DNA of 64,000 nucleotides from positions 34,570 through 98,569 of the forward strand of contig NIVC01003421.1 of assembly GCA_002269645.1 (NCBI GenBank), in the 5' to 3' direction. Source of the DNA: Macrostomum lignano (lineage: Eukaryota). Below the pieces are notes generated by a model. That model saw nothing but the letters and a program-made list of their open reading frames with translations, had not been told where the DNA came from and ran no database searches. Numbering within the stretch: the first letter of the stretch is position 1; every line of letters begins with the position of its first letter. The translations under genes were made by a program, and so were the position numbers. Positions 1 to 64,000 of this stretch are shown piece after piece.

Positions 1-1490
<1,490 letters not shown>

Positions 1491-5830: not shown

Positions 5831-5871
<41 letters not shown>

Positions 5872-5956: not shown

Positions 5957-6018
<62 letters not shown>

Positions 6019-13110: not shown

Positions 13111-13299
13111 AACTGATTAGTTAATGTTGTGCATGAACCTTCATCAAACCATATTTATTGATAAGATTCTTAATCTACCTCTTTAGCGAAGATTTTCTAA
13201 CGGTTGAGTTTGGGGTGAAGGTGGCTGTCCTTGCCCCAATCAATAATATTGTTAAGGTCGGGTGTCTGGAATAAAATCAATATATTTTTATCAAAACCC

Positions 13300-15027: not shown

Positions 15028-15749
15028 ACTGTGTATTTCGGACCCTTCAGATAGAGGAGTACTCGTACATGTAGAAGTAAAAAAGTTAGACAGCTAGCTC
15101 TTGAATGCAAGCAGTTTTGATACGCCAAATCAAGTACGTATAGACGTTCAAAGCGTTTTTATATTATATATTATTTAATCAAAATATGAAGCTTCTACAG
15201 ATTCAAGGTCGGAAGTTGAGTCGCCTTGCGAAATATTATTTTTCTTTCGATGAGACAAATCAACTGCCTCAAATACCTATATTATAGTTTGTACGAGTGT
15301 GTACCAGATCTGGCATGCGTTGCAAATGAAAGTATCCATTGAATATTGGCACTGAATATACATGGGGAATAATTGATTGAAAAAATGACGAGATTACCTT
15401 ACATCGATAGCTACAACACGCTGTACATGAAAGTGATTTTAGAAAGAGAAATTTAACACTAATTCCAATTACTTAATTTTCATTTCGTATAAACGAGTGG
15501 GCTTCTTATCACTATCAGGTACCGGTATAGGAAACAAATCACAAGCCATCGAAGGTTAACTAAAAAGTGTGAGCTTCAGTTAGGTGTACAAATAACAAAA
15601 TCAAAGCGATTTACTAAGATAATAAATCAATCAATCAATTTTTAACAATTATTCGATCGAAGCACTATTTCAGTGAGACCTTAGCCACTTGTTTTTTGTA
15701 CTCAAACAGAAAAAGTCCTACGAACGCACTACTAGCAGTAGCTTGCCGG

Positions 15750-21700: not shown

Positions 21701-24700
21701 TGGGAGGCTGGCCCAACAACTGAGGATCTGGGAGGCTGGCCCAGCAACTGAGGATCTGGGAGGCTGGCCCAGCAACTGAGGATCTGGGAGGCTGGCCCAA
21801 CAACTGAGGATCTGGGAGGCTGGCCCAGCAACTGAGGATCTGGGAGGCTGGCCTAGCAACTGATACTTTGGGAGGCTGGCCCAGCAACTGATACTTTGGG
21901 AGGCTGGCCTAGCAACTGATACTTTGGGAGGCTGGCCCAGCAACTGATACTTTAGGAGGCTGGCCCAGCAAATGAGAATCTGGGAAGGTGTCAGTCATAT
22001 CAATTACCCCTTCGGAGACAAGCAACTCACCTTGATAGTTAAAGCAATAGTTATCAGGATCAAGGAACTGTTTCACTGGAAACGACTGCTCCAGGAGAGG
22101 AATGCTCAAGAGAACATTCACATAGTTTTGCAACTCTTTCTGCCTAGTAGCCACAAACTCTCTGCCCTTGTTGCCAACCCATTTCTTAGGTGGCAGTGGC
22201 AATTCATAGCCAGAAATTTTCAGTACATTGTCTAAACTGACAAAATCGTTGTAGCGTCGGTAAACTTTCCAAGAATCTGAGTCACCTCTGTTTACCTTCA
22301 GAATGTACTCCTGTGAAAGTGGATACAATATGCAAAAGAATTTATTTCATATTCATTTTATTTCATGAGGGTCTATTTTATAAAGAGTAAACACCTGGTA
22401 ACATGAATAAAAAATTATGAAACAGCAATAATTTTAATTCTATTTGCAAAAATATTTTCATACAACCAAACCACAAACTTATCACATATATTACATACTT
22501 TTGGGCTAATCTGTGCTGTTATTAATGTTCAGTAAGTTGTTTAACAATCACCATGCCAATGAGCACAGAGCAATGAAGTAATCTAAAATATCTGGTCTGA
22601 TTTGAAAATTGCCCTTGAAAGCACTTGCACTTTTGCAACAAGTGTATGGAGATAATGCTATGTATTGCTCCAGAGTTTTTCAGTGGCACAAGCAATTTGA
22701 GAAGGGATGGGAAAGGGTTGAGGATGACACCAGGCGTGGAAGACCTTCAATGTCAAATGTTAAAGGCATTGTCCACAGAGTTTCTGTGCCAAGGCCAGAT
22801 TATCAATCAGCACGTTTACAAGTACAAAGGGATCCTGCAGCAAAGACAAGAGATGCAATTTATGGGAAGCCAACTAACTCGTGGTTTCTTCATCAGAACA
22901 ATGTGCTAATGTGCTCACAATGCTCTAAGAGTCAGGGTGGATCTCACAAATAGTAATGTCACAGTGCTAGACCTAGCTTCCATATTCACCCAATCTAGCT
23001 CCATGTGTTTTCCTATTTCCCAAGCTCAAGAAGGTTCTCAAGGGTACTCAATTTCCTAATGTTGATAGGGGCCTACCATCAGAAGGGCCACAATGACAAA
23101 ACTGCAAAGTATTTCCAAAGAAGCCTGGAGCAGAAGAATGGACAAGTGCATTTGGCTCAGGGGGAGTACTTTGAAGGAGCCAGATTTGATTCTAATCGAT
23201 TTTTGCTAATGAAGTTTCTGTGAGCCCAGTCCTAGAACTTTCTGACACACACCATAAATAGTTTTTTAAAAGTCTAATTCTACATACTATAAAACAACAA
23301 ACAAGCAACAATTCTTTGTGCAATTCCTGACAATTAGATAAAAAAGTTAATTTAAAGTTTAAAAAATGTAAAATCAAACTAATTTGCACTTTTTGTTGAT
23401 TTATTTTAAAGCCATAAAAATAGTGATTTTTAGAAAATAACTTTTCATATCTCTTATCACATGCCCTCTTTTTCTATGCTAGATATCTATCCCTTGCTAC
23501 TCCCTACATATGCATTGCACCTCCTTAATATATAGGCCTCTATGTATTATGTTATTGCTAAACTAATCTATATTAAACACTATCTAAAAATTGCCATTGG
23601 CTGCAATATGGAATAAAACATTTAATTTTATCCAAAGTATAACCAAACCCCTTTCCTTTTTTATATCAATGCCACAATGCCATCTAACACCTTTGGAACA
23701 CTAAATAACCTAATATTTTTATTTTATAAAACAATTGCTTAGTATATGATATATATTAGTTATAATAAGGAGTATTATTGTAAATTTAAACAAGAAAAAA
23801 TTTAGTAGCAAAAAAGAAAATCAAACTAAAGTCAATAATAAGAATTAGTCAATTAGTTAAAAAATTATATATAGGGCCTATAAAAATTAACTTTTAAGCA
23901 ACAAAATAACCTGTTAACTAATTAATACTAGTTAAAGTAAAACTTGTTAAATAAAATATATTGCAAAATGTCTTCTGTTTTTTATCTATAAAATGTCCTA
24001 CAAAATTTTATAAAGAACAGGTGTTTAAAAGTTTAGGATATTTGGGTAAGCAGATAATGCATATTATAAGGACCTACCTATAGGTGTTAAATATACAGGG
24101 TTGTTTAAATAAATCTAGAACAATTTGTTTCACCTGCTAGAAATTTAAATTGAGTCGCACGTCCTCACCACTATAGCGAATTGTAGCCCTGCATCCCTGC
24201 CTTCTTCTGCATTCCAGCTTGTTAATACTCCTGCTTCCTATTCATGGAAATTGATTGCCTAAAAATTATTATTGATTTGTTCCACATGGGACACACTCCT
24301 TTTCAAATTTCAAAGCTGCTTGGTTATCCCAAAAGCACCGTTTATGACATTGTTCATTGCTTTAAGTCAATTGGCAGTCCCGAAAGAAAGCTGCACACTG
24401 CTTGTCAGGATCAAATTCGGACATCTAGCTTCCTAGTAAGACTGAAATGGTCAATTTAGGCAGCACCAGGCCAGCCATATCTGAGCTGGCCAAGAAGTAG
24501 ACAGTCAGTCAACCAACAATCTCGCGAGCTGTCAATTGAGACCTCGGATGCCGCAGCTTCTTGCTGAAGATCCTGCAGCTGCTGATGTTGCAGCAGAAGA
24601 TGGCCGAGTTGACAAATGCCACCAGCTCATTTCTTCTTTCAAGTCAATGGGTGGCCCCTTTCGCTTCTTCTTAGACAAGAAAATTTTTAAGATCAACTGC

Positions 24701-25896
24701 TTGCGCAACTCAGAATGATAAGTGGGTCTGCCAGGACATAGCTGAAGTGCCAGCTAACTGCTGGAGCAAGAAGCCAGTGTCTGTCATGGTCTTGGCCATC
24801 ATCTCTAGCAACAGTCACGTAATGCCGCCACACTTCTTTGGCCAAGGGGAGACCATGACCAAGGAGATATACCAGCGTATCCTAGAGGCAAAAGTAAAGC
24901 CATGGATAGACAAGGCAGCTGCTAAGTGGCCAAACATCTTCTAGCAGGACTCTATGCTAGTCTACAAGTTAAGGCTTATCTAGCAGTGGTTGGCTGCCAA
25001 TGTGCCACATTTTTGGCTGAGCTGTGTGTGGATGCCGAACAGCTTAGACTTAAACCTGTGCAACTTCTACTTGTGGGGCAGAGTCTAGCGGGCAGCTTGT
25101 GCCACTTTCCATGGCAACGTAGACCAGCTGAAGGCTGCTAGTGCCATTAGGCAGCAAATAGCTGCCCTAGATTTTGCAGAGGTTGCAGGGGCTGTCTAAG
25201 CTTTTAGGCGCTGAGTTTAGCGAGTGTTGGCAGCTAGAGGCAGCCATATTGAATAAAATATGCAGCATATGATGTAGATTAACAAGAAACTAATTGTAGG
25301 TCCTATAGTTAATTTCTTAGAATCATTCAAAGTTGTTCCAGATTTATCAGAATGACCCTATAAATCATTGTTTACTTATACTCATACTCCTTTTCAAATA
25401 AATTTAATATTACATTTCACTAAATAATAAAAAATTAACCTATGCTAAATAGTTATATCAGTTATTATATATTTATCAATTATTATATATTGCAATATAT
25501 AATAATTAATATATTAATAAATATTAATTATATTTTAATTAAATATAATTGTTATATTTTAGTTTAATTTTAGTCTCAATATTTTAGCATATAGCTACCT
25601 CTTTAAATCATTAATTAAAACACTGAAAATCTTAACCAAATAGCGAATACTAGGTCCCTCCCTAGGTATGATATACTTTATAACATTGGTATAAATTTAA
25701 AACTGATACCTCAAAATATACTTAAGAGGCAGTTTCAAGCAACTGTTTATAAACAGTTTCTGCTCCCGAGTCCCAACTAACTTCTTAAGACAATACTTAC
25801 CACATATTCCTTTAGATCTTGGCTACCTTCTATTGAAACAGTAAGCTTATAGTAGTCATCCAAAATCTTGGACTCCGATGCACTAAAAAGGGCCAT
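15750..25896 (-). CDS. PXK: PX domain-containing protein kinase-like protein (PX + pseudokinase + proline-rich + WH2), complete, 543 aa
   Basis: 12 exons: 25801-25896, 22031-22310, 21276-21353, 21129-21205, 20968-21042, 20773-20877, 20537-20687, 19755-19997, 19600-19678, 16720-16927, 16581-16611, 15750-15958 (1632 nt, in frame). Motifs: VYRRYNDF...LPPKK (PX), GRQILEALKF, GHLHLGNV, DLENGLLGL, DVYSFGHCLYEM, C-terminal RGALLSDIAGFRKDGLKK (WH2). Confidence 0.95.
15985..16560. repeat. 38-bp minisatellite family, array 2, with 192-bp (5-unit) higher-order repeat; last PXK intron
   Basis: Variant TGCCCTGGTCAAATCG recurs at 16057, 16249 and 16441. Confidence 0.9.
17065..18963. mobile_element. Inverted-repeat (foldback/TIR) element with a ~980-bp insertion in its left arm
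   Basis: 40-bp perfect inverted repeat at 17065-17104 / 18924-18963, continued by a ~155-bp inverted repeat at 18084-18240 / 18763-18920. Insertion 17101-18082 has CACT...AGTG ends and subterminal inverted ATACAAGTTTAGGGG. Confidence 0.75.
17580..17990 (-). pseudogene. Frameshifted THAP zinc-finger domain remnant (transposase-type)
   Basis: Manual minus-strand translation gives ELLGKWISAIPRKW, CDPKHNYRICSLHF and SDAVPSIFPNAP, i.e. the THAP W, CSxHF and AVPTIF motifs, with frameshifts and a stop. Confidence 0.75.
19265..19500. repeat. CT-rich low-complexity tract
   Basis: Polypyrimidine run in PXK intron 16928-19599. Confidence 0.85.
20048..20512. repeat. 27-bp minisatellite (GACACGTGACTCCCTACTGACYCTGAG) in a PXK intron
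   Basis: Two sub-arrays, each followed by the same unique block (CCTAACTACTCAGAAGACACATGA..TTAAAAGTACACTA at ~20160 and ~20458). Confidence 0.92.
21432..21975. repeat. 28-bp minisatellite (GCAACTGAGGATCTGGGAGGCTGGCCCA) in PXK intron 2
   Basis: About 19 copies; GC-rich but without any CpG. Confidence 0.96.
22560..23258 (+). mobile_element. Internally deleted mariner transposon relic
   Basis: Fragments ALLQQVYGDNAMYCSRVFQWHKQFEKGWERVEDDTRRGRPS (mariner HTH), KGIVHREF, WFLHQNN, SYSPNLAP..FLFPKLK (YSPDLAP motif); mariner-like 3' terminus GTCCTAGAACTTTCTGACACACACCATA. The left TIR was not found. Confidence 0.85.
24096..25360 (+). mobile_element. Tc1/mariner-superfamily relic (resembles DD37D/maT), ~1.27 kb, with TIRs and TA flanks
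   Basis: Imperfect ~31-bp TIRs (CAGGGTTGTTTAAATAAATCTAGAACAA / reverse complement at 25330-25360) flanked by TA. Broken ORF with HTH (FQISKLLGYPKSTVYDIV) and catalytic fragments (KKPVSVMV..ISSNSHVMPPHFF..VKPW..F*QDS). Confidence 0.85.
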
Positions 25897-26361: not shown

Positions 26362-48146
<21,785 letters not shown>

Positions 48147-50737
48147 GTTTGTTGAAATCAATTAAAATTTTTTGAATGCTTCAGTTATCACTGTGAGAAA
48201 TTGTTATTTTTGTCTTCTGTGAGCTTTTTTGTGCTCGGTTTGGCATGCGGTGTCACTCTCCGTTTTCAGAGTGCTCAATAGTTTTATTTTTTTCAAGTAA
48301 ACTTTTCTGTGTGCTTACATCATCGAGTCGAGCTGATGTCAGCACGTCCTACTGCTGCAGTTAGGTTGCAGTAAGTTGTCTACTTCAAGTACTATAAAGT
48401 CTGAAATCATAGATTCAGAGGTCATCCGCTGATTGTAACTTGCTGTTTTGCATGCTTGTTATTTTACTTTTGACTAATTGATCATTTTGGAAAGAAGTAG
48501 CATCATATCAAGACAAGCGTCTAAAGTTTTCGTTATGCATGAAAAGATAAAAAAATCGTTTCTTTTTCGAGGTTTCATGGATTAAAGCTAACTTTACTTA
48601 CAGCTAACTAATTTTTCTCGACTCTTAACATTAACACTTAAATACGCTTTCTTTTATAACATTGCTATAGTTACTTTTACTATTAATTATAACTATCTCA
48701 GTGTGCGTGACTTTTATTTAATCTGAATGTATTATAACTAGTTGATTAATGTCTCCCATTTAAGTTTCTAAAAGTCACTATATGATAAAATCCACTGTCT
48801 GTCTCAGTGACGCAATCACAGCATCATTGTTTTTAAAAAAACATTTGTGCGACGTCTTTCCCCCCTTAGAGATTATCTATACTTCGACAATAGTGTTACT
48901 GCGTCCGAACTCCGAATGTGGAAGCCACAAGCACATCTCTGTCTGTCTGTCTGACTGTGTGTGTGTGTGTGTTTGTGCATTAGGCATTTCTTGGGACAAG
49001 CGTGTATAAACTGACCCGTGCTATTAGGACCAAAAATGTGTTGGGCCAGGCCCAATAAGTGCGTCCCGACACTTCCAAAAATGAATTCTATTGAAATGAA
49101 AAAATATTCATTGGAACCGTCTTTCGATTCTCCTTTCAAAAATCAATGTCATTTTTTCATATTTTTAATCAAACACGGGGAATCTAATGATTTGCAGTGT
49201 CCTAAGAAGTTTAAAAAATTATGCGAACTGATGGTCTGATCCAACAGAACAATTGGGTCTCAAATCGGAATTCTCGTTTTATTACAATATTTCTTACAAT
49301 ATCAAGAAAGTCTACTACAAGTAACAGATAGAGGTTCTCCACAGGGCTGCCAATCGACACTTGAAAGGATCCTGACATTTGGCATCGTGTTTACTATAAA
49401 ATATGAAATAATTTAATAAAGATTTAGAATATTACAATCAAGCATACAAACCTTATAGATTTAGTATATTTAGATTTTTGCATAGAAACAGCTAGCATCT
49501 AAATTCATTAGCTTCCAATTTCACTTATACACGAAACATGGCAAATTAAGGTTACATCCGCCTGTGCCCTCGGCCATTTTAACTGAAATTCTCGTTTTCA
49601 GTCAGCTGCATTAATCTATTTGTCATATGTGAATGGGTATTAACTGACTCAAGTTAGTGACTGGAGGCCATTAACGTAAAGTGACACTTTGAGTGAGGTA
49701 GTTTTCCGGTGGAAATTCTCACAGTCTTATGAAGCGCTTTTAGAGCAAAGAAATAAAGGGCAAAGAAAAACTTTGCATTTCCCGAGAAAACCGAGGACGA
49801 GTATTAGAGGGAAACGTTTAATCTCTAAGGCTTTAAATGACTTCCTTATTGGCCTGGGTTTGGGCAGCTATACTATGTAGAAAAATTTTTCCTAGAATTA
49901 TGATAATTATCGTCTGGTATACTGAAATGTACTGAGATACCAAGAAACTTAAGATGACTGCATGGACTGCTAGCACATGTTTGCGTGTCACTGTCACTGT
50001 AAAGTCGAAATCGATGACTAGTTTGGCCCAAAACTAACTACTAGGCCTTCCTGGAAAACAATTCTGCTTATCTTGGATCGTAAAGATAAACCCACGTACA
50101 GTGCAGAAGTGTTAGGACAAGCGTGTACAAGACCCAGGCAATCCCTTACCCAGGCCACGCGTACATTCCTATCGCGGCGGGGGGAAGCGGGGAGGAGAGG
50201 CGGGCGCAAGGGAGTCGGGATAAAGTTTACACTGAAGTTGAGGCCTACAAGAGGAAGAGCCAATTCTAACGGAAAGGTACATGTAGAAGTTCCCTTTGAC
50301 AAACGGCGTACTGGCGGTACTGCATATGTTCAAGCGAATATAATTCATTTACGAGACCTGCACTACACAGACAAAATGTGCCACGTCACAAGAGTTTCCA
50401 TGCATGACCTGGCATGAAAAGACTTGGCTAGGAACCATTACACATATGTAAGTAGAATTTAAAATTCTTTTTAAAATTTTATGATTAAATAAAAACTTAA
50501 CTGGAATTTACATATGTACTTTTCTAAAATTCCAGATACGTTGATATCGATAAGCTACCGTTTTCTTCTATAACAAACAGATTTGCCTTCATTGTCAAGT
50601 AAGTCTTGTCTCGTACTCGTATATGTCGTATTTTTTGTACGTTGAAAAAAATAATAAGCAGCCTAGTAATACTCTGAGCTCAGTGAAATATAAGAGAGGC
50701 GGCACGATCACCTTATTTATCAATTAATTTACAACAG

Positions 50738-51545
50738 CCAATCATCCTGCATCCTGCATTTACAACGCTGCATCCGTCATTTGGTTCACTTGCTGCTCAC
50801 AAGCCGCAGCAGCAGCAGCCGCTATCCGTGCAGGCAGTCAGTCTCTTTGTGAATTTTCTGGTGGATCTGAAGAAAACCCGTCCGGCACAGGATTAAAGAG
50901 AAAGAGACGATCTGTTTTGGGTGAGTATTATCTGCTGTAGAAGTATTGTACACCAGAGTACTTGTGTTACTTGGTAGAGCACAATTGAAAAGCAATGCAA
51001 CAATCTCAGTGGCATTGTTGGGACACAAGCTACAAACGCATTGAATAGTAAACACAGCCCAGCCTAGCTCAAGGCTAGTAATTTGTTGGGCATTTATTGG
51101 GACATTGCAGCCAGGCCTATTTTTTGAACAGCATTTGTTGGGTCGCACTTATTGGGACAATACTGATTCTAATCGCGACTACTTCTGAGTTCTGACTTTT
51201 CAAAACAGACCCAGCATTAGTTGAACACGTTCTATTAAAGGGTTCCTTTATAGCCTATTAATGATTACTAAAGGCAAGCCTATCTTAATTGATTTCTTTT
51301 CCTCGCAGATTCTGAAGTCAGCCACGCCAGCGACATGCCTAAGAGACAAGAATGCGCTTTAACGATCAGCAGCGAGCATTCTGATCTCGCCGCTGCATCC
51401 GTCATTTGGTTCACTTGCTGCTCACAAGCCGCAGCAGCAGCAGCCGCTATCCGTGCAGGCAGTCAGTCTATTTGTGAATTTTCTGGTGGATCTGAAGAAA
51501 ACCCGTCCGGCACAGGATTAAAGAGAAAGAGACGATCTGTTTTGG
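50738..51545 (+). other. Candidate exons at the array start: unique-flank exon A (50738-50920) and first repeated exon (51309-51545), both phase 1-1
   Basis: Acceptors TTTACAACAG and TTTCTTTTCCTCGCAG, donor G|GTGAGT; 183 and 237 nt; the phase-1 reading stays open across A and the repeated exons. No family match recognised. Confidence 0.5.
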
Positions 51546-53930
51546 GTGAGTATTATCTGCTGTAGAAGTATTGTACACCAGAGTACTTGTGTTACTTGGT
51601 AGAGCACAATTCAAAAGCAATGCAACAATCTCAGTGGCATTGTTGGGACACAAGCTACAAACGCATTGAATAGTAAACACAGCCCAGCCTAGCTCAAGGC
51701 TAGTAATTTGTTGGGCATTTATTGGGACATTGCAGCCAGGCCTATTTTTTGAACAGCATTTGTTGGGTCGCACTTATTGGGACAATACTGATTCTAATCG
51801 CGACTACTTCTGAGTTCTGACTTTTCAAAACAGACCCAGCATTAGTTGAACACGTTCTATTAAAGGGTTCCTTTATAGCCTATTAATGATTACTAAAGGC
51901 AAGCCTATCTTAATTGATTTCTTTTCCTCGCAGATTCTGAAGTCAGCCACGCCAGCGACATGCCTAAGAGACAAGAATGCGCTTTAACGATCAGCAGCGA
52001 GCATTCTGATCTCGCCGCTGCATCCGTCATTTGGTTCACTTGCTGCTCACAAGCCGCAGCAGCAGCAGCCGCTATCCGTGCAGGCAGTCAGTCTATTTGT
52101 GAATTTTCTGGTGGATCTGAAGAAAACCCGTCCGGCACAGGATTAAAGAGAAAGAGACGATCTGTTTTGGGTGAGTATTATCTGCTGTAGAAGTATTGTA
52201 CACCAGAGTACTTGTGTTACTTGGTAGAGCACAATTGAAAAGCAATGCAACAATCTCAGTGGCATTGTTGGGACACAAGCTACAAACGCATTGAATAGTA
52301 AACACAGCCCAGCCTAGCTCAAGGCTAGTAATTTGTTGGGCATTTATTGGGACATTGCAGCCAGGCCTATTTTTTGAACAGCATTTGTTGGGTCGCACTT
52401 ATTGGGACAATACTGATTCTAATCGCGACTACTTCTGAGTTCTGACTTTTCAAAACAGACCCAGCATTAGTTGAACACGTTCTATTAAAGGGTTCCTTTA
52501 TAGCCTATTAATGATTACTAAAGGCAAGCCTATCTTAATTGATTTCTTTTCCTCGCAGATTCTGAAGTCAGCCACGCCAGCGACATGCCTAAGAGACAAG
52601 AATGCGCTTTAACGATCAGCAGCGAGCATTCTGATCTCGCCGCTGCATACGTCATTTGGTTCACTTGCTGCTCACAAGCCGCAGCAGCAGCAGCCGCTAT
52701 CCGTGCAGGCAGTCAGTCTATTTGTGAATTTTCTGGTGGATCTGAAGAAAACCCGTCCGGCACAGGATTAAAGAGAAAGAGACGATCTGTTTTGGGTGAG
52801 TATTATCTGCTGTAGAAGTATTGTACACCAGAGTACTTGTGTTACTTGGTAGAGCACAATTCAAAAGCAATGCAACAATCTCAGTGGCATTGTTGGGACA
52901 CAAGCTACAAACGCATTGAATAGTAAACACAGCCCAGCCTAGCTCAAGGCTAGTAATTTGTTGGGCATTTATTGGGACATTGCAGCCAGGCCTATTTTTT
53001 GAACAGCATTTGTTGGGTCGCACTTATTGGGACAATACTGATTCTAATCGCGACTACTTCTGAGTTCTGACTTTTCAAAACAGACCCAGCATTAGTTGAA
53101 CACGTTCTATTAAAGGGTTCCTTTATAGCCTATTAATGATTACTAAAGGCAAGCCTATCTTAATTGATTTCTTTTCCTCGCAGATTCTGAAGTCAGCCAC
53201 GCCAGCGACATGCCTAAGAGACAAGAATGCGCTTTAACGATCAGCAGCGAGCATTCTGATCTCGCCGCTGCATCCGTCATTTGGTTCACTTGCTGCTCAC
53301 AAGCCGCAGCAGCAGCAGCCGCTATCCGTGCAGGCAGTCAGTCTCTTTGTGAATTTTCTGGTGGATCTGAAGAAAACCCGTCCGGCACAGGATTAAAGAG
53401 AAAGAGACGATCTGTTTTGGGTGAGTATTATCTGCTGTAGAAGTATTGTACACCAGAGTACTTGTGTTACTTGGTAGAGCACAATTGAAAAGCAATGCAA
53501 CAATCTCAGTGGCATTGTTGGGACACAAGCTACAAACGCATTGAATAGTAAACACAGCCCAGCCTAGCTCAAGGCTAGTAATTTGTTGGGCATTTATTGG
53601 GACATTGCAGCCAGGCCTATTTTTTGAACAGCATTTGTTGGGTCGCACTTATTGGGACAATACTGATTCTAATCGCGACTACTTCTGAGTTCTGACTTTT
53701 CAAAACAGACCCAGCATTAGTTGAACACGTTCTATTAAAGGGTTCCTTTATAGCCTATTAATGATTACTAAAGGCAAGCCTATCTTAATTGATTTCTTTT
53801 CCTCGCAGATTCTGAAGTCAGCCACGCCAGCGACATGCCTAAGAGACAAGAATGCGCTTTAACGATCAGCAGCGAGCATTCTGATCTCGCCGCTGCATCC
53901 GTCATTTGGTTCACTTGCTGCTCACAAGCC

Positions 53931-53993
<63 letters not shown>

Positions 53994-55846
53994 GCTATCC
54001 GTGCAGGCAGTCAGTCTATTTGTGAATTTTCTGGTGGATCTGAAGAAAACCCGTCCGGCACAGGATTAAAGAGAAAGAGACGATCTGTTTTGGGTGAGTA
54101 TTATCTGCTGTAGAAGTATTGTACACCAGAGTACTTGTGTTACTTGGTAGAGCACAATTCAAAAGCAATGCAACAATCTCAGTGGCATTGTTGGGACACA
54201 AGCTACAAACGCATTGAATAGTAAACACAGCCCAGCCTAGCTCAAGGCTAGTAATTTGTTGGGCATTTATTGGGACATTGCAGCCAGGCCTATTTTTTGA
54301 ACAGCATTTGTTGGGTCGCACTTATTGGGACAATACTGATTCTAATCGCGACTACTTCTGAGTTCTGACTTTTCAAAACAGACCCAGCATTAGTTGAACA
54401 CGTTCTATTAAAGGGTTCCTTTATAGCCTATTAATGATTACTAAAGGCAAGCCTATCTTAATTGATTTCTTTTCCTCGCAGATTCTGAAGTCAGCCACGC
54501 CAGCGACATGCCTAAGAGACAAGAATGCGCTTTAACGATCAGCAGCGAGCATTCTGATCTCGCCGCTGCATCCGTCATTTGGTTCACTTGCTGCTCACAA
54601 GCCGCAGCAGCAGCAGCCGCTATCCGTGCAGGCAGTCAGTCTCTTTGTGAATTTTCTGGTGGATCTGAAGAAAACCCGTCCGGCACAGGATTAAAGAGAA
54701 AGAGACGATCTGTTTTGGGTGAGTATTATCTGCTGTAGAAGTATTGTACACCAGAGTACTTGTGTTACTTGGTAGAGCACAATTCAAAAGCAATGCAACA
54801 ATCTCAGTGGCATTGTTGGGACACAAGCTACAAACGCATTGAATAGTAAACACAGCCCAGCCTAGCTCAAGGCTAGTAATTTGTTGGGCATTTATTGGGA
54901 CATTGCAGCCAGGCCTATTTTTTGAACAGCATTTGTTGGGTCGCACTTATTGGGACAATACTGATTCTAATCGCGACTACTTCTGAGTTCTGACTTTTCA
55001 AAACAGACCCAGCATTAGTTGAACACGTTCTATTAAAGGGTTCCTTTATAGCCTATTAATGATTACTAAAGCAAGCCTATCTTAATTGATTTCTTTTCCT
55101 CGCAGATTCTGAAGTCAGCCACGCCAGCGACATGCCTAAGAGACAAGAATGCGCTTTAACGATCAGCAGCGAGCATTCTGATCTCGCCGCTGCATCCGTC
55201 ATTTGGTTCACTTGCTGCTCACAAGCCGCAGCAGCAGCAGCCGCTATCCGTGCAGGCAGTCAGTCTCTTTGTGAATTTTCTGGTGGATCTGAAGAAAACC
55301 CGTCCGGCACAGGATTAAAGAGAAAGAGACGATCTGTTTTGGGTGAGTATTATCTGCTGTAGAAGTATTGTACACCAGAGTACTTGTGTTACTTGGTAGA
55401 GCACAATTCAAAAGCAATGCAACAATCTCAGTGGCATTGTTGGGACACAAGCTACAAACGCATTGAATAGTAAACACAGCCCAGCCTAGCTCAAGGCTAG
55501 TAATTTGTTGGGCATTTATTGGGACATTGCAGCCAGGCCTATTTTTTGAACAGCATTTGTTGGGTCGCACTTATTGGGACAATACTGATTCTAATCGCGA
55601 CTACTTCTGAGTTCTGACTTTTCAAAACAGACCCAGCATTAGTTGAACACGTTCTATTAAAGGGTTCCTTTATAGCCTATTAATGATTACTAAAGCAAGC
55701 CTATCTTAATTGATTTCTTTTCCTCGCAGATTCTGAAGTCAGCCACGCCAGCGACATGCCTAAGAGACAAGAATGCGCTTTAACGATCAGCAGCGAGCAT
55801 TCTGATCTCGCCGCTGCATCCGTCATTTGGTTCACTTGCTGCTCAC

Positions 55847-55907
<61 letters not shown>

Positions 55908-58381
55908 TATCCGTGCAGGCAGTCAGTCTATTTGTGAATTTTCTGGTGGATCTGAAGAAAACCCGTCCGGCACAGGATTAAAGAGAAAGAGACGATCTGT
56001 TTTGGGTGAGTATTATCTGCTGTAGAAGTATTGTACACCAGAGTACTTGTGTTACTTGGTAGAGCACAATTCAAAAGCAATGCAACAATCTCAGTGGCAT
56101 TGTTGGGACACAAGCTACAAACGCATTGAATAGTAAACACAGCCCAGCCTAGCTCAAGGCTAGTAATTTGTTGGGCATTTATTGGGACATTGCAGCCAGG
56201 CCTATTTTTTGAACAGCATTTGTTGGGTCGCACTTATTGGGACAATACTGATTCTAATCGCGACTACTTCTGAGTTCTGACTTTTCAAAACAGACCCAGC
56301 ATTAGTTGAACACGTTCTATTAAAGGGTTCCTTTATAGCCTATTAATGATTACTAAAGCAAGCCTATCTTAATTGATTTCTTTTCCTCGCAGATTCTGAA
56401 GTCAGCCACGCCAGCGACATGCCTAAGAGACAAGAATGCGCTTTAACGATCAGCAGCGAGCATTCTGATCTCGCCGCTGCATCCGTCATTTGGTTCACTT
56501 GCTGCTCACAAGCCGCAGCAGCAGCAGCCGCTATCCGTGCAGGCAGTCAGTCTATTTGTGAATTTTCTGGTGGATCTGAAGAAAACCCGTCCGGCACAGG
56601 ATTAAAGAGAAAGAGACGATCTGTTTTGGGTGAGTATTATCTGCTGTAGAAGTATTGTACACCAGAGTACTTGTGTTACTTGGTAGAGCACAATTCAAAA
56701 GCAATGCAACAATCTCAGTGGCATTGTTGGGACACAAGCTACAAACGCATTGAATAGTAAACACAGCCCAGCCTAGCTCAAGGCTAGTAATTTGTTGGGC
56801 ATTTATTGGGACATTGCAGCCAGGCCTATTTTTTGAACAGCATTTGTTGGGTCGCACTTATTGGGACAATACTGATTCTAATCGCGACTACTTCTGAGTT
56901 CTGACTTTTCAAAACAGACCCAGCATTAGTTGAACACGTTCTATTAAAGGGTTCCTTTATAGCCTATTAATGATTACTAAAGCAAGCCTATCTTAATTGA
57001 TTTCTTTTCCTCGCAGATTCTGAAGTCAGCCACGCCAGCGACATGCCTAAGAGACAAGAATGCGCTTTAACGATCAGCAGCGAGCATTCTGATCTCGCCG
57101 CTGCATCCGTCATTTGGTTCACTTGCTGCTCACAAGCCGCAGCAGCAGCAGCAGCGCTATCCGTGCAGGCAGTCAGTCTATTTGTGAATTTTCTGGTGGA
57201 TCTGAAGAAAACCCGTCCGGCACAGGATTAAAGAGAAAGAGACGATCTGTTTTGGGTGAGTATTATCTGCTGTAGAAGTATTGTACACCAGAGTACTTGT
57301 GTTACTTGGTAGAGCACAATTCAAAAGCAATGCAACAATCTCAGTGGCATTGTTGGGACACAAGCTACAAACGCATGAATAGTAAACACAGCCCAGCCTA
57401 GCTCAAGGCTAGTAATTTGTTGGGCATTTATTGGGACATTGCAGCCAGGCCTATTTTTTGAACAGCATTTGTTGGGTCGCACTTATTGGGACAATACTGA
57501 TTCTAATCGCGACTACTTCTGAGTTCTGACTTTTCAAAACAGACCCAGCATTAGTTGAACACGTTCTATTAAAGGGTTCCTTTATAGCCTATTAATGATT
57601 ACTAAAGCAAGCCTATCTTAATTGATTTCTTTTCCTCGCAGATTCTGAAGTCAGCCACGCCAGCGACATGCCTAAGAGACAAGAATGCGCTTTAACGATC
57701 AGCAGCGAGCATTCTGATCTCGCCGCTGCATCCGTCATTTGGTTCACTTGCTGCTCACAAGCCGCAGCAGCAGCAGCCGCTATCCGTGCAGGCAGTCAGT
57801 CTCTTTGTGAATTTTCTGGTGGATCTGAAGAAAACCCGTCCGGCACAGGATTAAAGAGAAAGAGACGATCTGTTTTGGGTGAGTATTATCTGCTGTAGAA
57901 GTATTGTACACCAGAGTACTTGTGTTACTTGGTAGAGCACAATTCAAAAGCAATGCAACAATCTCAGTGGCATTGTTGGGACACAAGCTACAAACGCATG
58001 AATAGTAAACACAGCCCAGCCTAGCTCAAGGCTAGTAATTTGTTGGGCATTTATTGGGACATTGCAGCCAGGCCTATTTTTTGAACAGCATTTGTTGGGT
58101 CGCACTTATTGGGACAATACTGATTCTAATCGCGACTACTTCTGAGTTCTGACTTTTCAAAACAGACCCAGCATTAGTTGAACACGTTCTATTAAAGGGT
58201 TCCTTTATAGCCTATTAATGATTACTAAAGCAAGCCTATCTTAATTGATTTCTTTTCCTCGCAGATTCTGAAGTCAGCCACGCCAGCGACATGCCTAAGA
58301 GACAAGAATGCGCTTTAACGATCAGCAGCGAGCATTCTGATCTCGCCGCTGCATCCGTCATTTGGTTCACTTGCTGCTCAC

Positions 58382-58428
<47 letters not shown>

Positions 58429-61400
58429 GCTATCCGTGCAGGCAGTCAGTCTATTTGTGAATTTTCTGGTGGATCTGAAGAAAACCCGTCCGGCACAGGA
58501 TTAAAGAGAAAGAGACGATCTGTTTTGGGTGAGTATTATCTGCTGTAGAAGTATTGTACACCAGAGTACTTGTGTTACTTGGTAGAGCACAATTCAAAAG
58601 CAATGCAACAATCTCAGTGGCATTGTTGGGACACAAGCTACAAACGCATTGAATAGTAAACACAGCCCAGCCTAGCTCAAGGCTAGTAATTTGTTGGGCA
58701 TTTATTGGGACATTGCAGCCAGGCCTATTTTTTGAACAGCATTTGTTGGGTCGCACTTATTGGGACAATACTGATTCTAATCGCGACTACTTCTGAGTTC
58801 TGACTTTTCAAAACAGACCCAGCATTAGTTGAACACGTTCTATTAAAGGGTTCCTTTATAGCCTATTAATGATTACTAAAGCAAGCCTATCTTAATTGAT
58901 TTCTTTTCCTCGCAGATTCTGAAGTCAGCCACGCCAGCGACATGCCTAAGAGACAAGAATGCGCTTTAACGATCAGCAGCGAGCATTCTGATCTCGCCGC
59001 TGCATCCGTCATTTGGTTCACTTGCTGCTCACAAGCCGCAGCAGCAGCAGCCGCTATCCGTGCAGGCAGTCAGTCTCTTTGTGAATTTTCTGGTGGATCT
59101 GAAGAAAACCCGTCCGGCACAGGATTAAAGAGAAAGAGACGATCTGTTTTGGGTGAGTATTATCTGCTGTAGAAGTATTGTACACCAGAGTACTTGTGTT
59201 ACTTGGTAGAGCACAATTCAAAAGCAATGCAACAATCTCAGTGGCATTGTTGGGACACAAGCTACAAACGCATTGAATAGTAAACACAGCCCAGCCTAGC
59301 TCAAGGCTAGTAATTTGTTGGGCATTTATTGGGACATTGCAGCCAGGCCTATTTTTTGAACAGCATTTGTTGGGTCGCACTTATTGGGACAATACTGATT
59401 CTAATCGCGACTACTTCTGAGTTCTGACTTTTCAAAACAGACCCAGCATTAGTTGAACACGTTCTATTAAAGGGTTCCTTTATAGCCTATTAATGATTAC
59501 TAAAGCAAGCCTATCTTAATTGATTTCTTTTCCTCGCAGATTCTGAAGTCAGCCACGCCAGCGACATGCCTAAGAGACAAGAATGCGCTTTAACGATCAG
59601 CAGCGAGCATTCTGATCTCGCCGCTGCATCCGTCATTTGGTTCACTTGCTGCTCACAAGCCGCAGCAGCAGCAGCCGCTATCCGTGCAGGCAGTCAGTCT
59701 ATTTGTGAATTTTCTGGTGGATCTGAAGAAAACCCGTCCGGCACAGGATTAAAGAGAAAGAGACGATCTGTTTTGGGTGAGTATTATCTGCTGTAGAAGT
59801 ATTGTACACCAGAGTACTTGTGTTACTTGGTAGAGCACAATTCAAAAGCAATGCAACAATCTCAGTGGCATTGTTGGGACACAAGCTACAAACGCATTGA
59901 ATAGTAAACACAGCCCAGCCTAGCTCAAGGCTAGTAATTTGTTGGGCATTTATTGGGACATTGCAGCCAGGCCTATTTTTTGAACAGCATTTGTTGGGTC
60001 GCACTTATTGGGACAATACTGATTCTAATCGCGACTACTTCTGAGTTCTGACTTTTCAAAACAGACCCAGCATTAGTTGAACACGTTCTATTAAAGGGTT
60101 CCTTTATAGCCTATTAATGATTACTAAAGCAAGCCTATCTTAATTGATTTCTTTTCCTCGCAGATTCTGAAGTCAGCCACGCCAGCGACATGCCTAAGAG
60201 ACAAGAATGCGCTTTAACGATCAGCAGCGAGCATTCTGATCTCGCCGCTGCATCCGTCATTTGGTTCACTTGCTGCTCACAAGCCGCAGCAGCAGCAGCC
60301 GTATCTATCCGTGCAGGCAGTCAGTCTCTTTGTGAATTTTCTGGTGGATCTGAAGAAAACCCGTCCGGCACAGGATTAAAGAGAAAGAGACGATCTGTTT
60401 TGGGTGAGTATTATCTGCTGTAGAAGTATTGTACACCAGAGTACTTGTGTTACTTGGTAGAGCACAATTCAAAAGCAATGCAACAATCTCAGTGGCATTG
60501 TTGGGACACAAGCTACAAACGCATTGAATAGTAAACACAGCCCAGCCTAGCTCAAGGCTAGTAATTTGTTGGGCATTTATTGGGACATTGCAGCCAGGCC
60601 TATTTTTTGAACAGCATTTGTTGGGTCGCACTTATTGGGACAATACTGATTCTAATCGCGACTACTTCTGAGTTCTGACTTTTCAAAACAGACCCAGCAT
60701 TAGTTGAACACGTTCTATTAAAGGGTTCCTTTATAGCCTATTAATGATTACTAAAGGCAAGCCTATCTTAATTGATTTCTTTTCCTCGCAGATTCTGAAG
60801 TCAGCCACGCCAGCGACATGCCTAAGAGACAAGAATGCGCTTTAACGATCAGCAGCGAGCATTCTGATCTCGCCGCTGCATCCGTCATTTGGTTCACTTG
60901 CTGCTCACAAGCCGCCAGCAGCAGCAGCCCGCTATCCGTGCAGGCAGTCAGTCTCTTTGTGAATTTTCTGGTGGATCTGAAGAAAACCCGTCCGGCACAG
61001 GATTAAAGAGAAAGAGACGATCTGTTTTGGGTGAGTATTATCTGCTGTAGAAGTATTGTACACCAGATACTTGTGTTACTTGGTAGAGCACAATTCAAAA
61101 GCAATGCAACAATCTCAGTGGCATTGTTGGGACACAAGCTACAAAACGCATTGAATAGTAAACACAGCCCAGCCTAGCTCAAGGCTAGTAATTTGTTGGG
61201 CATTTATTGGGACATTGCAGCCAGGCCTATTTTTTGAACAGCATTTGTTGGGGTCGCACTTATTGGGACAATACTGATTCTAATCGCGACTACTTCTGAG
61301 TTCTGACTTTTCAAAACAGACCCAGCATTAGTTGAACACGTTCTATTAAAGGGTTCCTTTATAGCCTATTAATGATTACTAAAGCAAGCCTATCTTAATT

Positions 61401-64000
61401 GATTTCTTTTCTCGCAGATTCTGAAGTCAGCCACGCCAGCGACATGCCTAAGAGACAAGAATGCGCTTTAACGATCAGCAGCGAGCATTCTGATCTCGCC
61501 GCTGCATCCGTCATTTGGTTCACTTGTGCTGCTCACAAGCCAGCAGCCAGCAGCAGCAGCAGCAGCCGCTATCCGTGCAGGCAGTCAGTCTCTTTGTGAA
61601 TTTTCTGGTGGATCTGAAGAAAACCCGTCCGGCACAGGATTAAAGAGAAAGAGACGATCTGTTTTGGGTGAGTATTATCTGCTGTAGAAGTATTGTACAC
61701 CAGAGTACTTGTGTTACTTGGTAGAGCACAATTCAAAAGCAATGCAACAATCTCAGTGGCATTGTTGGGACACAAGCTACAAACGCATTGAATAGTAAAC
61801 ACAGCCCAGCCTAGCTCAAGGCTAGTAATTTGTGGCATTATATTGGACATTGCAGCCAGGCCTATTTTTTGAACAGCATTTGTTGGGTCGCACTTATTGG
61901 GACAATACTGATTCTAATCGCGACTACTTCTGAGTCTGACTTTTAAAACAGACCAGCATTAGTTGAACACGTTCTATTAAAGGGTTCCTTTATAGCCTAT
62001 TAATGATTACTAAAGGCAAGCCTATCTTAATTGATTTCTTTTCCTCGCAATTCTGAAGTCAGCCACGCCAGCGACATGCCTAAGAGACAAGAATGCGCTT
62101 TAACGATCAGCAGCGAGCATTCTGATCTCGCCTGCATCCGTCATTTGGTTCACTTGCTCTGCTTCACAAGCGCGCAGCAGGCACAGCAGCCGCTATCCGT
62201 GCAGGCAGTCAGTCTATTTGTGAATTTTCTGGTGGATCTGAAGAAAACCCGTCCGGCACAGGATTAAAGAGAAAGAGACGATCTGTTTTGGGTGAGTATT
62301 ATCTGCTGTAGAAGTATTGTACACCAGAGTACTTGTGTTACTGGTAGAGCACAATTCAAAAGCAATGCCAACAATCTCAGTGGCATTGTTGGACACAAGC
62401 TACAAACGCAATGAATAGTAAACACAGCCCAGCCTAGCTCAAGGCTAGTAATTTGTTGGGCATTTATTGGGACATTGCAGCCAGGCCTATTTTTGAACAG
62501 CATTTTGTTGGGTCGCACTTATTGGGACAATACTGATTCTAATCGCGACTACTTCTGAGTTCTGACTTTTCAAAACAGACCCAGCATTAGTTGAACACGT
62601 TCTATTAAAGGGTTCCTTTATAGGCCTATTAATGATTACTAAAGCAAGCCTATCTTAATTGATTTCTTTTCCTCGCAGATTCTGAAGTCAGCCACGCCAG
62701 CGACATGCCTAAGAGACAAGAATGCGCTTTAACGATCAGCAGCGAGCATTCTGATCTCGCGCTGCATCCGTCATTTGGTTCACTTGCTGCTCACAAGCCG
62801 CAGCCAGCAGCAGGCAGCCGCTATCCGTGCAGGCAGTCAGTCTCTTTGTGAATTTTCTGGTGGATCTGAAGAAAACCCGTCCGGCACAGGATTAAAGAGA
62901 AAGAGACGATCTGTTTTGGGTGAGTATTATCTGCTGTAGAAGTATTGTACACCAGAGTACTTGTGTTACTTGGTAGAGCACAATTCAAAAGCAATGCAAC
63001 AATCTCAGTGGCATTGTTGGGACACAAGCTACAAACGCAATTGAATAGTAAACACAGCCCAGCCTAGCTCAAGGCTAGTAATTTGTTGGGCATTTATTGG
63101 GACATTGCAGCCAGGCCTATTTTTGAACAGCATTTGTTGGGTCGCACTTATTGGGACAATACTGATTCTAATCGCGACTACTTCTGAGTTCTGACTTTTC
63201 AAAACAGACCCAGCATTAGTTGAACACGTTCTATTAAAGGGTTCCTTTATAGCCTATTAATGATTACTAAAGCAAGCCTATCTTAATTGATTTCTTTTCC
63301 TCGCAGATTCTGAAGTCAGCCAACGCCAGCGACATGCCTAAGAGACAAGAATGCGCTTTAACGATCAGCAGCGAGCATTCTGATCTCGCCGCTGCATCCG
63401 TCATTTGGTTCACTTGCTGCTCACAAGCCGCAGCAGCAGCAGCAGCAGCCGCGCTATCCGTGCAGGCAGTCAGTCTCTTTGTGAATTTTCTGGTGGATCT
63501 GAAGAAAACCCGTCCGGCACAGGATTAAAGAGAAAGAGACGATCTGTTTTGGGTGAGTATTATCTGCTGTAGAAGTATTGTACACCAGTACTTGTGTTAC
63601 TTGGTAGAGCACAATTCAAAAGCAATGCAACAATCTCAGTGCATTGTTGGGACACAAGCTACAAACGCTTGAATAGTAAACACAGCCCAGCCTAGCTCAA
63701 GGCTAGTAATTTGTTGGGCATTTATTGGGACATTGGCAGCCAGGCCTATTTTTTGAACAGCATTTTTGTTGGTCGCACTTATTGGGACAATACTGATTCT
63801 AATCGCGACTACTTCTGAGTTTCTGACTTTTCAAACAGACCAGCAATTAGTTGAACACGTTCTATTAAAGGGTTCCTTTATAGCTATTAATGATTACTAA
63901 AGCAAGCCTATCTTAATTGATTTCTTTTCCTCGCAGATTCTGAAGTCAGCCACGCCAGCGACATGCCTAAGAGACAGAATGCGCTTTAACGATCAGCAGC
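50767..64000 (+). repeat. 624-625 bp tandem array, at least 21 units, running off the window end
   Basis: The unit ATG recurs at 51335, 51960, 52585, 53210, 53835, 54508, 55132, 55756, 56419, 57043, 57668, 58291, 58942, 59566, 60190, 60818 and onward to ~63960; units are near-identical. Confidence 0.99.

What the first reader, a model, noticed from the sequence alone, without database searches (positions are those of the whole stretch)
50738..64000. 13-kb tandem array of an exon+intron unit: at least 21 frame-preserving 79-codon exons
Seen: every 624-625 bp unit has a strong acceptor (TTTCTTTTCCTCGCAG), a 237-nt segment, a strong donor (G|GTGAGT) and a 388-nt intron-like spacer. The segment is symmetric phase 1-1 and open in only that frame (the other two hit TAA or TGA): DSEVSHASDMPKRQECALTISSEHSDLAAASVIWFTCCSQ(A)nIRAGSQS(I/L)CEFSGGSEENPSGTGLKRKRRSVL. 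It has four Cys, a poly-Ala tract and an NLS-like KRKRR. Inference: chained splicing would give a >1,600-aa repeat protein or a variable-length cassette system. The array starts 2.6 kb after the last recognisable tomosyn exon, at the position of tomosyn's alternatively spliced hypervariable region, so it is either inside the tomosyn gene or belongs to a nested or adjacent gene. The tomosyn exon ends in phase 0 and I found no convincing 0-to-1 bridging exon, so the link is unresolved.
Basis: partly seen in the sequence, partly recalled or inferred. Interest (0 to 1): 0.78.

Follow-up and report, generated by a model that had tools for sequence, protein, structure and literature searches.

The report
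Dispersed flatworm repeat with spliced units
The 13-kb array is real, but it is one copy of a repeat element specific to the flatworm Macrostomum lignano, found at five or more unrelated sites; its 625-bp units are transcribed and spliced exon to exon without detectable protein-level selection, so it is most likely a passenger in a tomosyn intron and not part of tomosyn.

Summary
The array exists as described. It has 21 GTGAGT donors, 19 exact acceptors, and 20 full units plus 2 partial ones. The period is 623-673 bp and varies only through a (GCA)n tract. Fourteen of the 20 full exon copies keep the frame, not "at least 21".

The organism is Macrostomum lignano. The same array lies on at least 11 other contigs of assembly GCA_002269645.1. 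In four of them, as in the window, it has the same 1.77-kb left arm with a sharp boundary. Complete copies also share a right arm holding a terminal exon (stop codon, then AATAAA). Flanks are mutually unrelated and TG-rich, so this is a dispersed element, not a tomosyn feature. One complete copy sits in a myosin heavy-chain intron, and the myosin gene model skips it.

GenBank gene models built from RNA-seq join consecutive exon copies at exactly the predicted GT/AG sites, so chained splicing is supported.

Coding constraint is not:
- exon and intron vary equally;
- 7 of 8 exon substitutions change the protein or stop it;
- one array carries a spread stop codon;
- no homologue exists outside this species.

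The last tomosyn-like exon ends in phase 1, not phase 0, so in-frame splicing into the array is possible but undemonstrated.

The parts
46945..47082 (+). Last exon of the Lgl/tomosyn-family gene visible in the window (...[36 protein letters not shown]). Its 3' end is set by the donor G|GTAACT at 47083 and is phase 1. The 5' end is approximate.
   Evidence: ORF listing; sequence. Concatenated exons match Lgl2 at E=5e-20 in the PDB sequence search, with a weak LLGL Pfam hit. The tomosyn assignment itself rests on my memory of STXBP5.
47099..48012 (.). (CTGT)n microsatellite directly after that exon's donor; intronic.
   Evidence: TRF, 232 copies.
48954..48970 (.). (TG)n run abutting the left end of the element. 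TG-rich DNA flanks every copy examined.
48971..50740 (+). Left arm of the dispersed element. It begins GTTTGTGCATTAGGCATTTCTTGGGACAAGCG.
   Evidence: About 97% identical to L001 4439-6192, L002 1-1171, L003 about 6200-7970, L004 5443-7208 and L010 5616-7380. The common 5' boundary is sharp and the upstream DNA is unrelated between loci. No Pfam hit to its ORFs.
50741..50920 (+). Junction filler plus a 5'-truncated first exon copy (homology to the unit from about 50767), with no acceptor. The 705-bp segment present here in the other copies is missing. That segment holds a GTGAGT donor and the first acceptor ...CACGCACAG|.
   Evidence: Alignment A1.
50921..63552 (+). 20 complete units, each a 386-388 nt intron-like spacer (GTGAGT...TTTCTTTTCCTCGCAG) followed by a 237-285 nt exon-like segment.
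51546..51933 (+). Example intron-like spacer (unit 2). It contains three forward copies of the motif TTGGGAC.
   Evidence: No Rfam hit; folding z = -0.45.
51934..52170 (+). Example exon-like segment (unit 2), phase 1-1, 79 codons.
53927..53992 (+). Expanded (GCA)n tract (22 repeats) in unit 5. Similar expansions lie at 55848-55907 and 58383-58427. This is the only source of length variation between units.
61031..64000 (+). Units 17-21, rich in one-base indels with almost no mismatches. The frames are broken and unit 18 has lost its acceptor AG. This may be low-quality consensus.
63553..64000 (+). 21st unit, cut off by the window end. The array continues beyond the window, so the right arm and terminal exon are not visible.
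   Evidence: Right arm seen in L001, L003, L004 and L010.

Best explanation
The array is the internal part of one copy of a young dispersed repeat element specific to Macrostomum lignano.

A complete copy has this structure (shown):
- a 1.77-kb left arm;
- a 705-bp segment that carries a GTGAGT donor and ends in an acceptor;
- a partial exon;
- N tandem 625-bp units, each one intron plus one exon;
- a variant terminal exon with a stop codon, and AATAAA 78 bp after it;
- five 38-bp repeats;
- about 0.65 kb of right arm.

The whole element is bounded by TG-rich microsatellite DNA.

How the array arose (inferred): the tandem part grew by unequal exchange of an exon-intron-exon segment, probably helped by the (GCA)n tract where the array starts and ends. 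It is kept uniform by concerted evolution.

The product is a repetitive RNA. Its open frame is a young relic or an unconstrained ORF, not a conserved protein (inferred from the substitution pattern).

The window copy lies in sense orientation in the intron after the tomosyn-like exon that ends at 47,082. It has lost the 705-bp segment. Tomosyn mRNA most likely skips it, as the myosin model skips the copy in its intron (inferred by analogy).
For: Organism and restriction to one species:
- All 30 protein hits among 5.8 billion sequences are M. lignano.
- An exhaustive phmmer search of 1.84 billion cluster representatives adds only one chance hit.

Dispersal:
- The window, L001, L003, L004 and L010 share identical left boundaries.
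- L001 and L003 were aligned and diverge right after the same right-end sequence. L004 and L010 carry the same terminal motif followed by unrelated flanks.
- Flanks show no similarity to one another.
- Arrays hold 6, 7-9, 10+, 14+ and 21+ units.
- GenBank models are numbered Mlig029855g10 to g39, and there are also Mlig026960g1 and Mlig003618g1.

Intronic passenger:
- In L004 the complete element (5443-14794) lies between the myosin exons ...GANIET and LLEKARV.
- The 1785-aa myosin model spans the element, and a separate 130-aa model sits on the array.

Transcription and splicing:
- The annotation method is RNA-seq based (PMC5730564).
- The junction KRKRRSVL|(A/D)SEVS appears in P0001, P0004, P0007 and P0031.
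- L001 spliced at the predicted sites gives P0001, including the terminal exon ...IRAGSQLIDEFSGRAGYFLSF*.

No coding constraint:
- Variant-site density is 8/220 in the exon against 20/387 in the intron (Fisher p=0.43).
- The 8 exon variants are 6 missense, 1 nonsense and 1 synonymous, giving omega of about 2.
- TGG>TAG has spread through L002. It was counted in 7 units and in 11 of the 14 units translated.
- Predicted proteins use two reading frames, poly-Ala and poly-Gln.
- There is no Pfam domain. The AlphaFold2 model has mean pLDDT 42.5.
Against: - No RNA data were examined directly, and nothing is known about expression of the window copy itself.
- The family is so young (1-3% divergence) that only 8 exon substitutions exist, so weak purifying selection cannot be excluded.
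- 14 of the first 16 well-assembled units in the window are intact.
- P0028 is a 47%-identical older version of the exon that is still open and keeps KRKRRSVL. This hints at some past or present coding use.
- KRKRR followed by S looks like a proprotein-convertase site, and some models are labelled 'Secreted protein' by UniProt.
- No TIR, LTR, transposase or clear target-site duplication was found, so the mechanism of dispersal is unexplained.
- About 85% of this genome exists in three copies (PMC10733133). The number of independent insertions is therefore smaller than the number of gene models. I showed only five loci with mutually unrelated flanks.
- Both sense-oriented intronic copies sit in phase-1 introns, which fits an exonisation role better than a pure passenger role.
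Confidence: 0.65

Rival explanations
1. It is a genuine multi-copy protein-coding gene nested in the tomosyn intron. It would encode a variable-length repeat protein. One version is a secreted polyprotein cut at the KRKRR sites into peptides of about 75 aa with four cysteines each. Another is a nuclear protein that uses KRKRR as an NLS.
For: - The exon is symmetric phase 1-1 and a multiple of 3. It is open in most units of the window (14/20) and L001 (5/6).
- Transcript-derived models read through the junctions in this frame and end in a dedicated terminal exon with a stop codon and AATAAA.
- A diverged exon version, P0028, keeps the frame and the basic motif.
- UniProt labels some models 'Secreted protein'.
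Against: - Seven of 8 exon substitutions are missense or nonsense, and the exon varies as much as the intron.
- L002 has an in-frame stop in most units.
- The models exist in two frames and all are fragments.
- No start exon or signal peptide was identified.
- No homologue exists outside the species, there is no Pfam domain, and the fold prediction has low confidence.
- An open 79-codon frame has a 5-15% chance expectation.
Confidence: 0.2
2. The array exons are cassette exons of tomosyn itself. They would be spliced in frame into its hypervariable region, giving tomosyn isoforms of variable length or truncated isoforms.
For: - The array is on the same strand as tomosyn.
- The upstream tomosyn-like exon ends in phase 1 with G, so G+AT gives Asp and the array frame continues...PDLH-D-SEVSH.
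- The splice sites are strong.
- The window copy lacks the 705-bp segment that in the other copies carries a donor and the first acceptor.
Against: - The same element occurs at four or more other, unrelated loci.
- In the myosin gene the RNA-seq-based model skips the element.
- None of the protein models that contain the repeat carries tomosyn or any other host domain in the sequence held here.
- Complete copies end in their own stop codon and poly(A) signal, so splicing into the array would truncate the host protein rather than extend it.
- The downstream tomosyn exons are outside the window.
Confidence: 0.07
3. It is a host gene for small RNAs. The spliced exons would be a by-product, and the conserved 388-nt introns would release a snoRNA, miRNA or piRNA precursor, as in the SNORD115/116 clusters.
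For: - The architecture fits: tandem units of one exon plus one intron, spliced, with exons under no coding constraint.
- The intron is as conserved as the exon.
Against: - No Rfam match even at E<=1.
- No excess folding energy on either strand, z = -0.45 and -0.66.
- I saw no canonical C box (UGAUGA) in the spacer when reading it.
- Equal conservation of intron and exon is expected anyway under concerted evolution.
Confidence: 0.05
4. It is an inert, untranscribed satellite whose splice-like motifs are fortuitous.
For: - The ORF length is within chance.
- The array is homogenised like a satellite.
Against: Transcript-derived GenBank models use exactly these GT/AG sites at several arrays. The element also has a matching terminal exon and poly(A) signal.
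Confidence: 0.03

Closest known systems
Exon-cassette VNTRs inside protein-coding genes (human LPA kringle IV-2 repeat; NBPF Olduvai/DUF1220 exon sets). Comparison from general knowledge.
   Same: Tandem genomic units that each hold complete, phase-symmetric exon(s) plus intron. The exons are spliced to one another, and copy number varies between arrays.
   Different: - Those arrays sit between unique exons of one gene and are under protein-level constraint.
- Here the cassette has its own terminal exon and arms and is dispersed to five or more unrelated loci.
- It shows omega of about 2, and one array carries a stop codon that has spread through its units.
Satellites and tandem arrays carried inside mobile or dispersed elements (for example Tetris/foldback-derived satellites in Drosophila virilis; MITE- or Helitron-associated satellites of bivalves). 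Comparison from general knowledge.
   Same: - Unique arms with fixed ends flank an internal tandem array of variable copy number.
- Many copies lie in unrelated genomic contexts.
- A short motif (TTGGGAC) recurs in the terminus, in every monomer and in the subterminal repeats.
   Different: - No TIRs, LTRs, hairpin or transposase were found.
- The ends are a short direct repeat (GTTTGTG) embedded in (TG)n.
- The monomer is a splice-competent exon plus intron. I do not know of that being described for those elements.
Tandem snoRNA host-gene clusters (SNORD115/SNORD116 in the SNURF-SNRPN region). Comparison from general knowledge.
   Same: Repeated exon-plus-intron units are transcribed as one long RNA and spliced. 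The exons are non-coding.
   Different: No intron-encoded structured RNA was detectable. The element is dispersed rather than a single locus.
D4Z4 macrosatellite (DUX4). Comparison from general knowledge.
   Same: Each unit of a macrosatellite has an ORF. A distinct distal segment supplies the poly(A) signal for the last unit.
   Different: D4Z4 units are not spliced to each other. They are 3.3 kb long and encode a conserved homeodomain protein.

Membership tests
Exon-cassette VNTR of a single protein-coding gene (LPA KIV-2 / NBPF type) | Each unit contains complete exon(s) with symmetric phase, so any copy number keeps the frame. | tested here: met
   237-nt exon (237-285 nt with the GCA tract), phase 1-1.
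Exon-cassette VNTR of a single protein-coding gene (LPA KIV-2 / NBPF type) | The array is embedded between unique exons of one gene and spliced to them. | tested here: not met
   The same array, with its own arms and terminal exon, lies at five or more unrelated loci. The myosin model skips it. Splicing to tomosyn is frame-compatible but not shown.
Exon-cassette VNTR of a single protein-coding gene (LPA KIV-2 / NBPF type) | The reading frame is kept by purifying selection. | tested here: not met
   Six missense, 1 nonsense and 1 synonymous variant. Exon variation equals intron variation. A stop codon has spread through L002. Power is low, with only 8 sites.
Satellite / macrosatellite DNA | Head-to-tail monomers homogenised within arrays, with copy number differing between arrays. 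| tested here: met
   More than 99% identity within the window array. Array-specific variants exist (D/H in the window, stop in L002). Unit counts are 6 to 21+.
Transposable element | Many copies with identical termini in unrelated flanking DNA. | tested here: met
   Left end shared in 5 loci. L001 and L003 diverge right after the same right end, and L004 and L010 carry the same terminal motif. Flanks show no mutual similarity.
Transposable element | Terminal inverted repeats or long terminal repeats. | tested here: not met
   Comparison of the left and right arms gave only chance matches of 12 bp or less. The ends share a 7-bp direct repeat, GTTTGTG.
Transposable element | Target-site duplication. 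| tested here: inconclusive
   The 8-bp sequence TGTGCATG lies on both sides in L001. In L003, L004 and L010 both flanks are (TG)n, which hides any duplication.
Transposable element | Encodes, or has relatives that encode, a transposase or reverse transcriptase. | tested here: inconclusive
   No Pfam hit to the ORFs of the left arm. Autonomous relatives could not be searched because no eukaryotic genome collection is available here.
Spliced-leader RNA gene array | Contains the 35-nt M. lignano SL sequence directly upstream of a donor site. | tested here: not met
   The SL sequence from PMC8629364 is absent from the window at up to 3 mismatches.
snoRNA host-gene cluster | Intron-encoded snoRNA in each unit. 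| tested here: inconclusive
   No Rfam hit at E<=1 and no excess structure. A lineage-specific snoRNA cannot be excluded, and there is no covariation to use.
Tomosyn (STXBP5) gene, for the flanking gene | Lgl/tomosyn WD40 propeller sequence plus a C-terminal R-SNARE motif. | tested here: inconclusive
   The exons match Lgl2 (E=5e-20) and weakly the LLGL Pfam family. The N-terminus resembles STXBP5 from memory. The R-SNARE part is outside the window. No M. lignano tomosyn model was found.

The most novel reading that the evidence does not exclude
The element may be a mobile cassette associated with TG microsatellites that carries a tandemly amplified, symmetric phase 1-1 exon. It would act as a natural exon-shuffling vector or gene trap. 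When it lands in sense orientation in a phase-1 intron, as in both sense cases seen (tomosyn and myosin), its acceptors could capture host transcripts in frame. The host protein would then gain a variable number of 79-aa modules ending in KRKRR and be terminated at the element's own stop codon and poly(A) site. Alternatively, spliced-leader trans-splicing could release the array RNA from the host pre-mRNA. The host-gene names that UniProt attaches to some repeat-only models (Dymeclin, UCH, Rho-GAP, BAF250_C, DRIM) would be traces of such chimeras.
Probability: 0.1. Interest if true: 0.8.

Novelty: new variant of a known kind. Interest (0 to 1): 0.45.

Why it matters
- **Annotation.** A single repeat family accounts for dozens of 'hypothetical', 'secreted' and oddly named protein entries of M. 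lignano in GenBank and UniProt. It should be flagged as a repeat.
- **Repeat biology.** This is a clean example of a dispersed element whose satellite monomer is a functional splice unit of one exon plus one intron. The RNA product has a length set by array copy number, and the element places strong sense-strand splice sites and a poly(A) signal inside host introns.
- **Possible host effects.** If host transcripts are ever captured, the element would be a live case of exon shuffling or gene trapping by a repeat in a laboratory model animal where transgenesis and RNAi are available. Frame compatibility exists at both sense-oriented intronic copies seen.
- **If not.** It remains a young, lineage-specific, spliced satellite RNA of unknown use.

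Tried and rejected
- **Rfam:** searched at gathering threshold on the whole window and at E<=1 on 48,960-52,170. Nothing found.
- **tRNA scan:** nothing found.
- **SL RNA gene array:** rejected, because the SL sequence is absent.
- **RNA folding of the spacer:** no excess structure on either strand.
- **Pfam:** no hit for one unit or for the ORFs of the left arm. The borderline PF14442 score appears only when weak matches over several repeats are summed, and I treat it as spurious.
- **AlphaFold2 on P0003 without an alignment:** mean pLDDT 42.5, uninformative. I ran no fold search on it.
- **Bacterial promoter/terminator scan:** not applicable to a flatworm.
- **Search for the M. lignano tomosyn protein**, to see what follows ...DLHG: only 40-55% identical proteins from other organisms were returned.
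- **Locus of the diverged exon version P0028:** not on record, and a search with it returned only itself. It is not present in the window, L001 or L002.
- **TIR/LTR search between the arms:** only chance matches.
- **Exact reconstruction of P0031 from L004:** failed. I suspect poly-Ala length differences and models projected from one transcript onto several near-identical loci, but I did not test this.
- **Alternative junctions** in the UniProt (MAKER) models (IRAG|N/T..., KKT|H/P..., SVL|ASILISP): by my own reading of the unit sequence they map to internal GT (GTCAGT, GTCCGG) and AG (CAGCAG|CG) sites. They may be choices an ab initio predictor made to keep a frame open, so I did not count them as evidence.
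- **L003 and L005-L012 except L010:** not available to scripts and were read only through the tools.

Full report
**1. The observation**

The array is there. The donor TTTTGG|GTGAGT occurs 21 times between 50,915 and 63,547. The exact acceptor TTTCTTTTCCTCGCAG occurs 19 times. Cutting at the donors gives 20 complete units of 623-673 bp, a 5'-truncated first copy, and a 21st unit cut by the window end.

Unit length varies almost only through the (GCA)n tract, which is expanded at 53,927, 55,848 and 58,383.

Units are more than 99% identical in the exon part and in the 388-nt spacer alike.

The count of frame-preserving exons is too high. Fourteen of the 20 complete copies are intact. Units 10, 16, 17, 19 and 20 have frameshifts or stops, and unit 18 lost its acceptor AG. 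Units 17-21 carry 5-13 one-base indels each with 0-2 mismatches. That looks like unpolished long-read consensus, so their damage may be artefact.

The open frame alone is not remarkable. In 59% of shuffled units some frame has a stop-free run of at least 79 codons, and the minus strand has a 101-108 aa ORF per unit.

**2. Organism and relatives**

A search with two exon copies found 30 proteins, all from Macrostomum lignano. An exhaustive phmmer search of 1.84 billion cluster representatives added nothing real.

The hits are chains of the same exon joined as ...KRKRRSVL|(D/A)SEVS.... They are fragments of 104-295 aa and come in two frames, poly-Ala and poly-Gln.

The GenBank models are named BOX15_Mlig029855g10 to g39, Mlig026960g1 and Mlig003618g1. 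That annotation was built from RNA-seq with StringTie/TACO, with ORFs called by TransDecoder (PMC5730564). Splicing locus L001 at the predicted GT/AG sites reproduces model P0001 apart from poly-Ala length, including a distinct last exon.

**3. It is a dispersed element**

I fetched 12 loci on 11 contigs of GCA_002269645.1.

The window (48,971-50,740), L001, L003, L004 and L010 share the same 1.77-kb left arm at about 97% identity. L002 has it too but is cut by a contig end. The 5' boundary is sharp (GTTTGTGCATTAGG...), and upstream of it the loci are unrelated.

L001, L003, L004 and L010 also share a right arm. It holds a variant terminal exon (...IRAGSQLIDEFSGRAGYFLSF, TGA), AATAAA 78 bp later, five 38-bp repeats, and about 0.65 kb ending ...CACGTTTGTG. 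Aligned L001 and L003 diverge right after that sequence, and L004 and L010 carry the same end followed by unrelated DNA.

All ends abut (TG)n or TG-rich DNA. No TIR, LTR or transposase was found, and an 8-bp duplication is seen only in L001. The motif TTGGGAC occurs 27 times in the forward direction: in the terminus, three times per unit, and in the 38-bp repeats.

The other copies have a 705-bp segment between the left arm and the array. It carries a GTGAGT donor and ends in an acceptor. The window copy has lost this segment.

About 85% of this genome is present in three copies (PMC10733133). The gene-model count therefore overstates the number of insertions, but five loci with unrelated flanks stand.

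**4. Context**

The window's plus strand carries a BRWD/PHIP-like gene at 1-13 kb. From 26.35 kb it carries an Lgl/tomosyn-family gene.

The last visible exon of that gene ends CAT G|GTAACT at 47,082. G+AT would give Asp and continue in the array frame, so a tomosyn-array junction is frame-compatible. The remaining tomosyn exons must lie beyond the window.

In L004 a complete element lies in sense orientation in a myosin heavy-chain intron, which is also phase 1. It sits between ...GANIET and LLEKARV. The 1785-aa myosin model skips the element, and a separate model sits on the array.

In L003 the element is antisense inside a TIR-domain gene model.

**5. Coding or not**

Across about 45 units of five arrays, the non-microsatellite exon positions have 8 variant sites in 220 nt. 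The spacer has 20 in 387 nt (p=0.43). The 8 exon variants are 6 missense, 1 nonsense and 1 synonymous, giving omega of about 2, which is compatible with neutrality.

The nonsense change TGG>TAG has spread through array L002, where 11 of 14 translated units are broken.

There is no Pfam domain and no confident fold.

Against this, the family is very young, so statistical power is low. Most well-assembled units are open. One 47%-identical older exon version, P0028, is still open and keeps KRKRRSVL.

**6. Other readings tested**

- SL RNA gene array: rejected.
- Structured RNA in the spacer: no support.

**7. Verdict**

The array is the tandem core of a species-specific dispersed element that sits as a passenger in a tomosyn intron. 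It is transcribed and spliced unit to unit. It most likely gives a repetitive RNA, or an unconstrained ORF, rather than a 1,600-aa protein or a tomosyn domain.

Three points remain open: how the element disperses, why both sense intronic copies are in phase-1 introns, and why UniProt gives host-gene names to repeat-only models.

Noticed in passing
window 46945-47083: The last tomosyn-like exon ends in phase 1 (CAT G|GTAACT), so it could splice in frame to the array exons. The myosin intron that hosts another copy (L004, donor at about 5031, acceptor at about 20476) is also phase 1.
   Followed up: partly
window 1-13100 (+): The upstream gene is a BRWD/PHIP-like protein. It has a BRWD ancillary domain at 4001-4465 (E=3.5e-29) and a bromodomain at 5064-5600 (E=6e-15). 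Its exons and introns are interleaved with long coding-frame minisatellites, such as (GIEVD)n at 2167-3828 and SHDPISQ-like repeats at 6856-7949.
   Followed up: partly
window 22600-25140 (+): ORF fragments here look like a decayed mariner/Tc1-type transposase (for example ...QQVYGDNAMYCSRVFQWHKQFEKGWERVEDDTRRGRP...). They lie between the two genes. Pfam did not confirm the two pieces I tested.
   Followed up: partly
window 31185-33200, 33520-35200, 41690-42800, 45161-45844, 47099-48012: The introns of the tomosyn-like gene are packed with microsatellites and minisatellites. These include tetranucleotide runs that translate as LSVC/LSIY repeats, a minisatellite that translates as [13 protein letters not shown] repeats, and a 66-bp repeat of 10.6 copies. 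Each produces long spurious ORFs.
   Followed up: no
L001 11640-11830; L003 15320-15420; element right arm: After the terminal exon there are three (L003) to five (L001) tandem 38-bp repeats (GGAATTGTTGGGACAGCCC...). They carry the same TTGGGAC motif found in the left terminus and three times in each 625-bp unit. This may be a protein-binding motif.
   Followed up: partly
P0012, P0023, P0024, P0026, P0027, P0029, P0030 (UniRef entries): These repeat-only protein fragments carry host-gene names (Dymeclin, UCH, BAF250_C, Rho-GAP, DRIM) that their sequences do not justify. They may be traces of chimeric host-plus-array gene models.
   Followed up: partly
L010 about 4100-5480 and about 15350-16720: The DNA on both sides of this element copy shares a direct duplication of about 1.4 kb (98% identity) that includes a 28-bp tandem repeat.
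   Followed up: no
P0028 (UniRef A0A1I8FV09): This is an older, 47%-identical version of the repeat exon. It is still open, keeps SEHSD...SQSI...GLKRKRRSVL, and is spliced to a canonical exon copy. Its locus could not be retrieved.
   Followed up: partly
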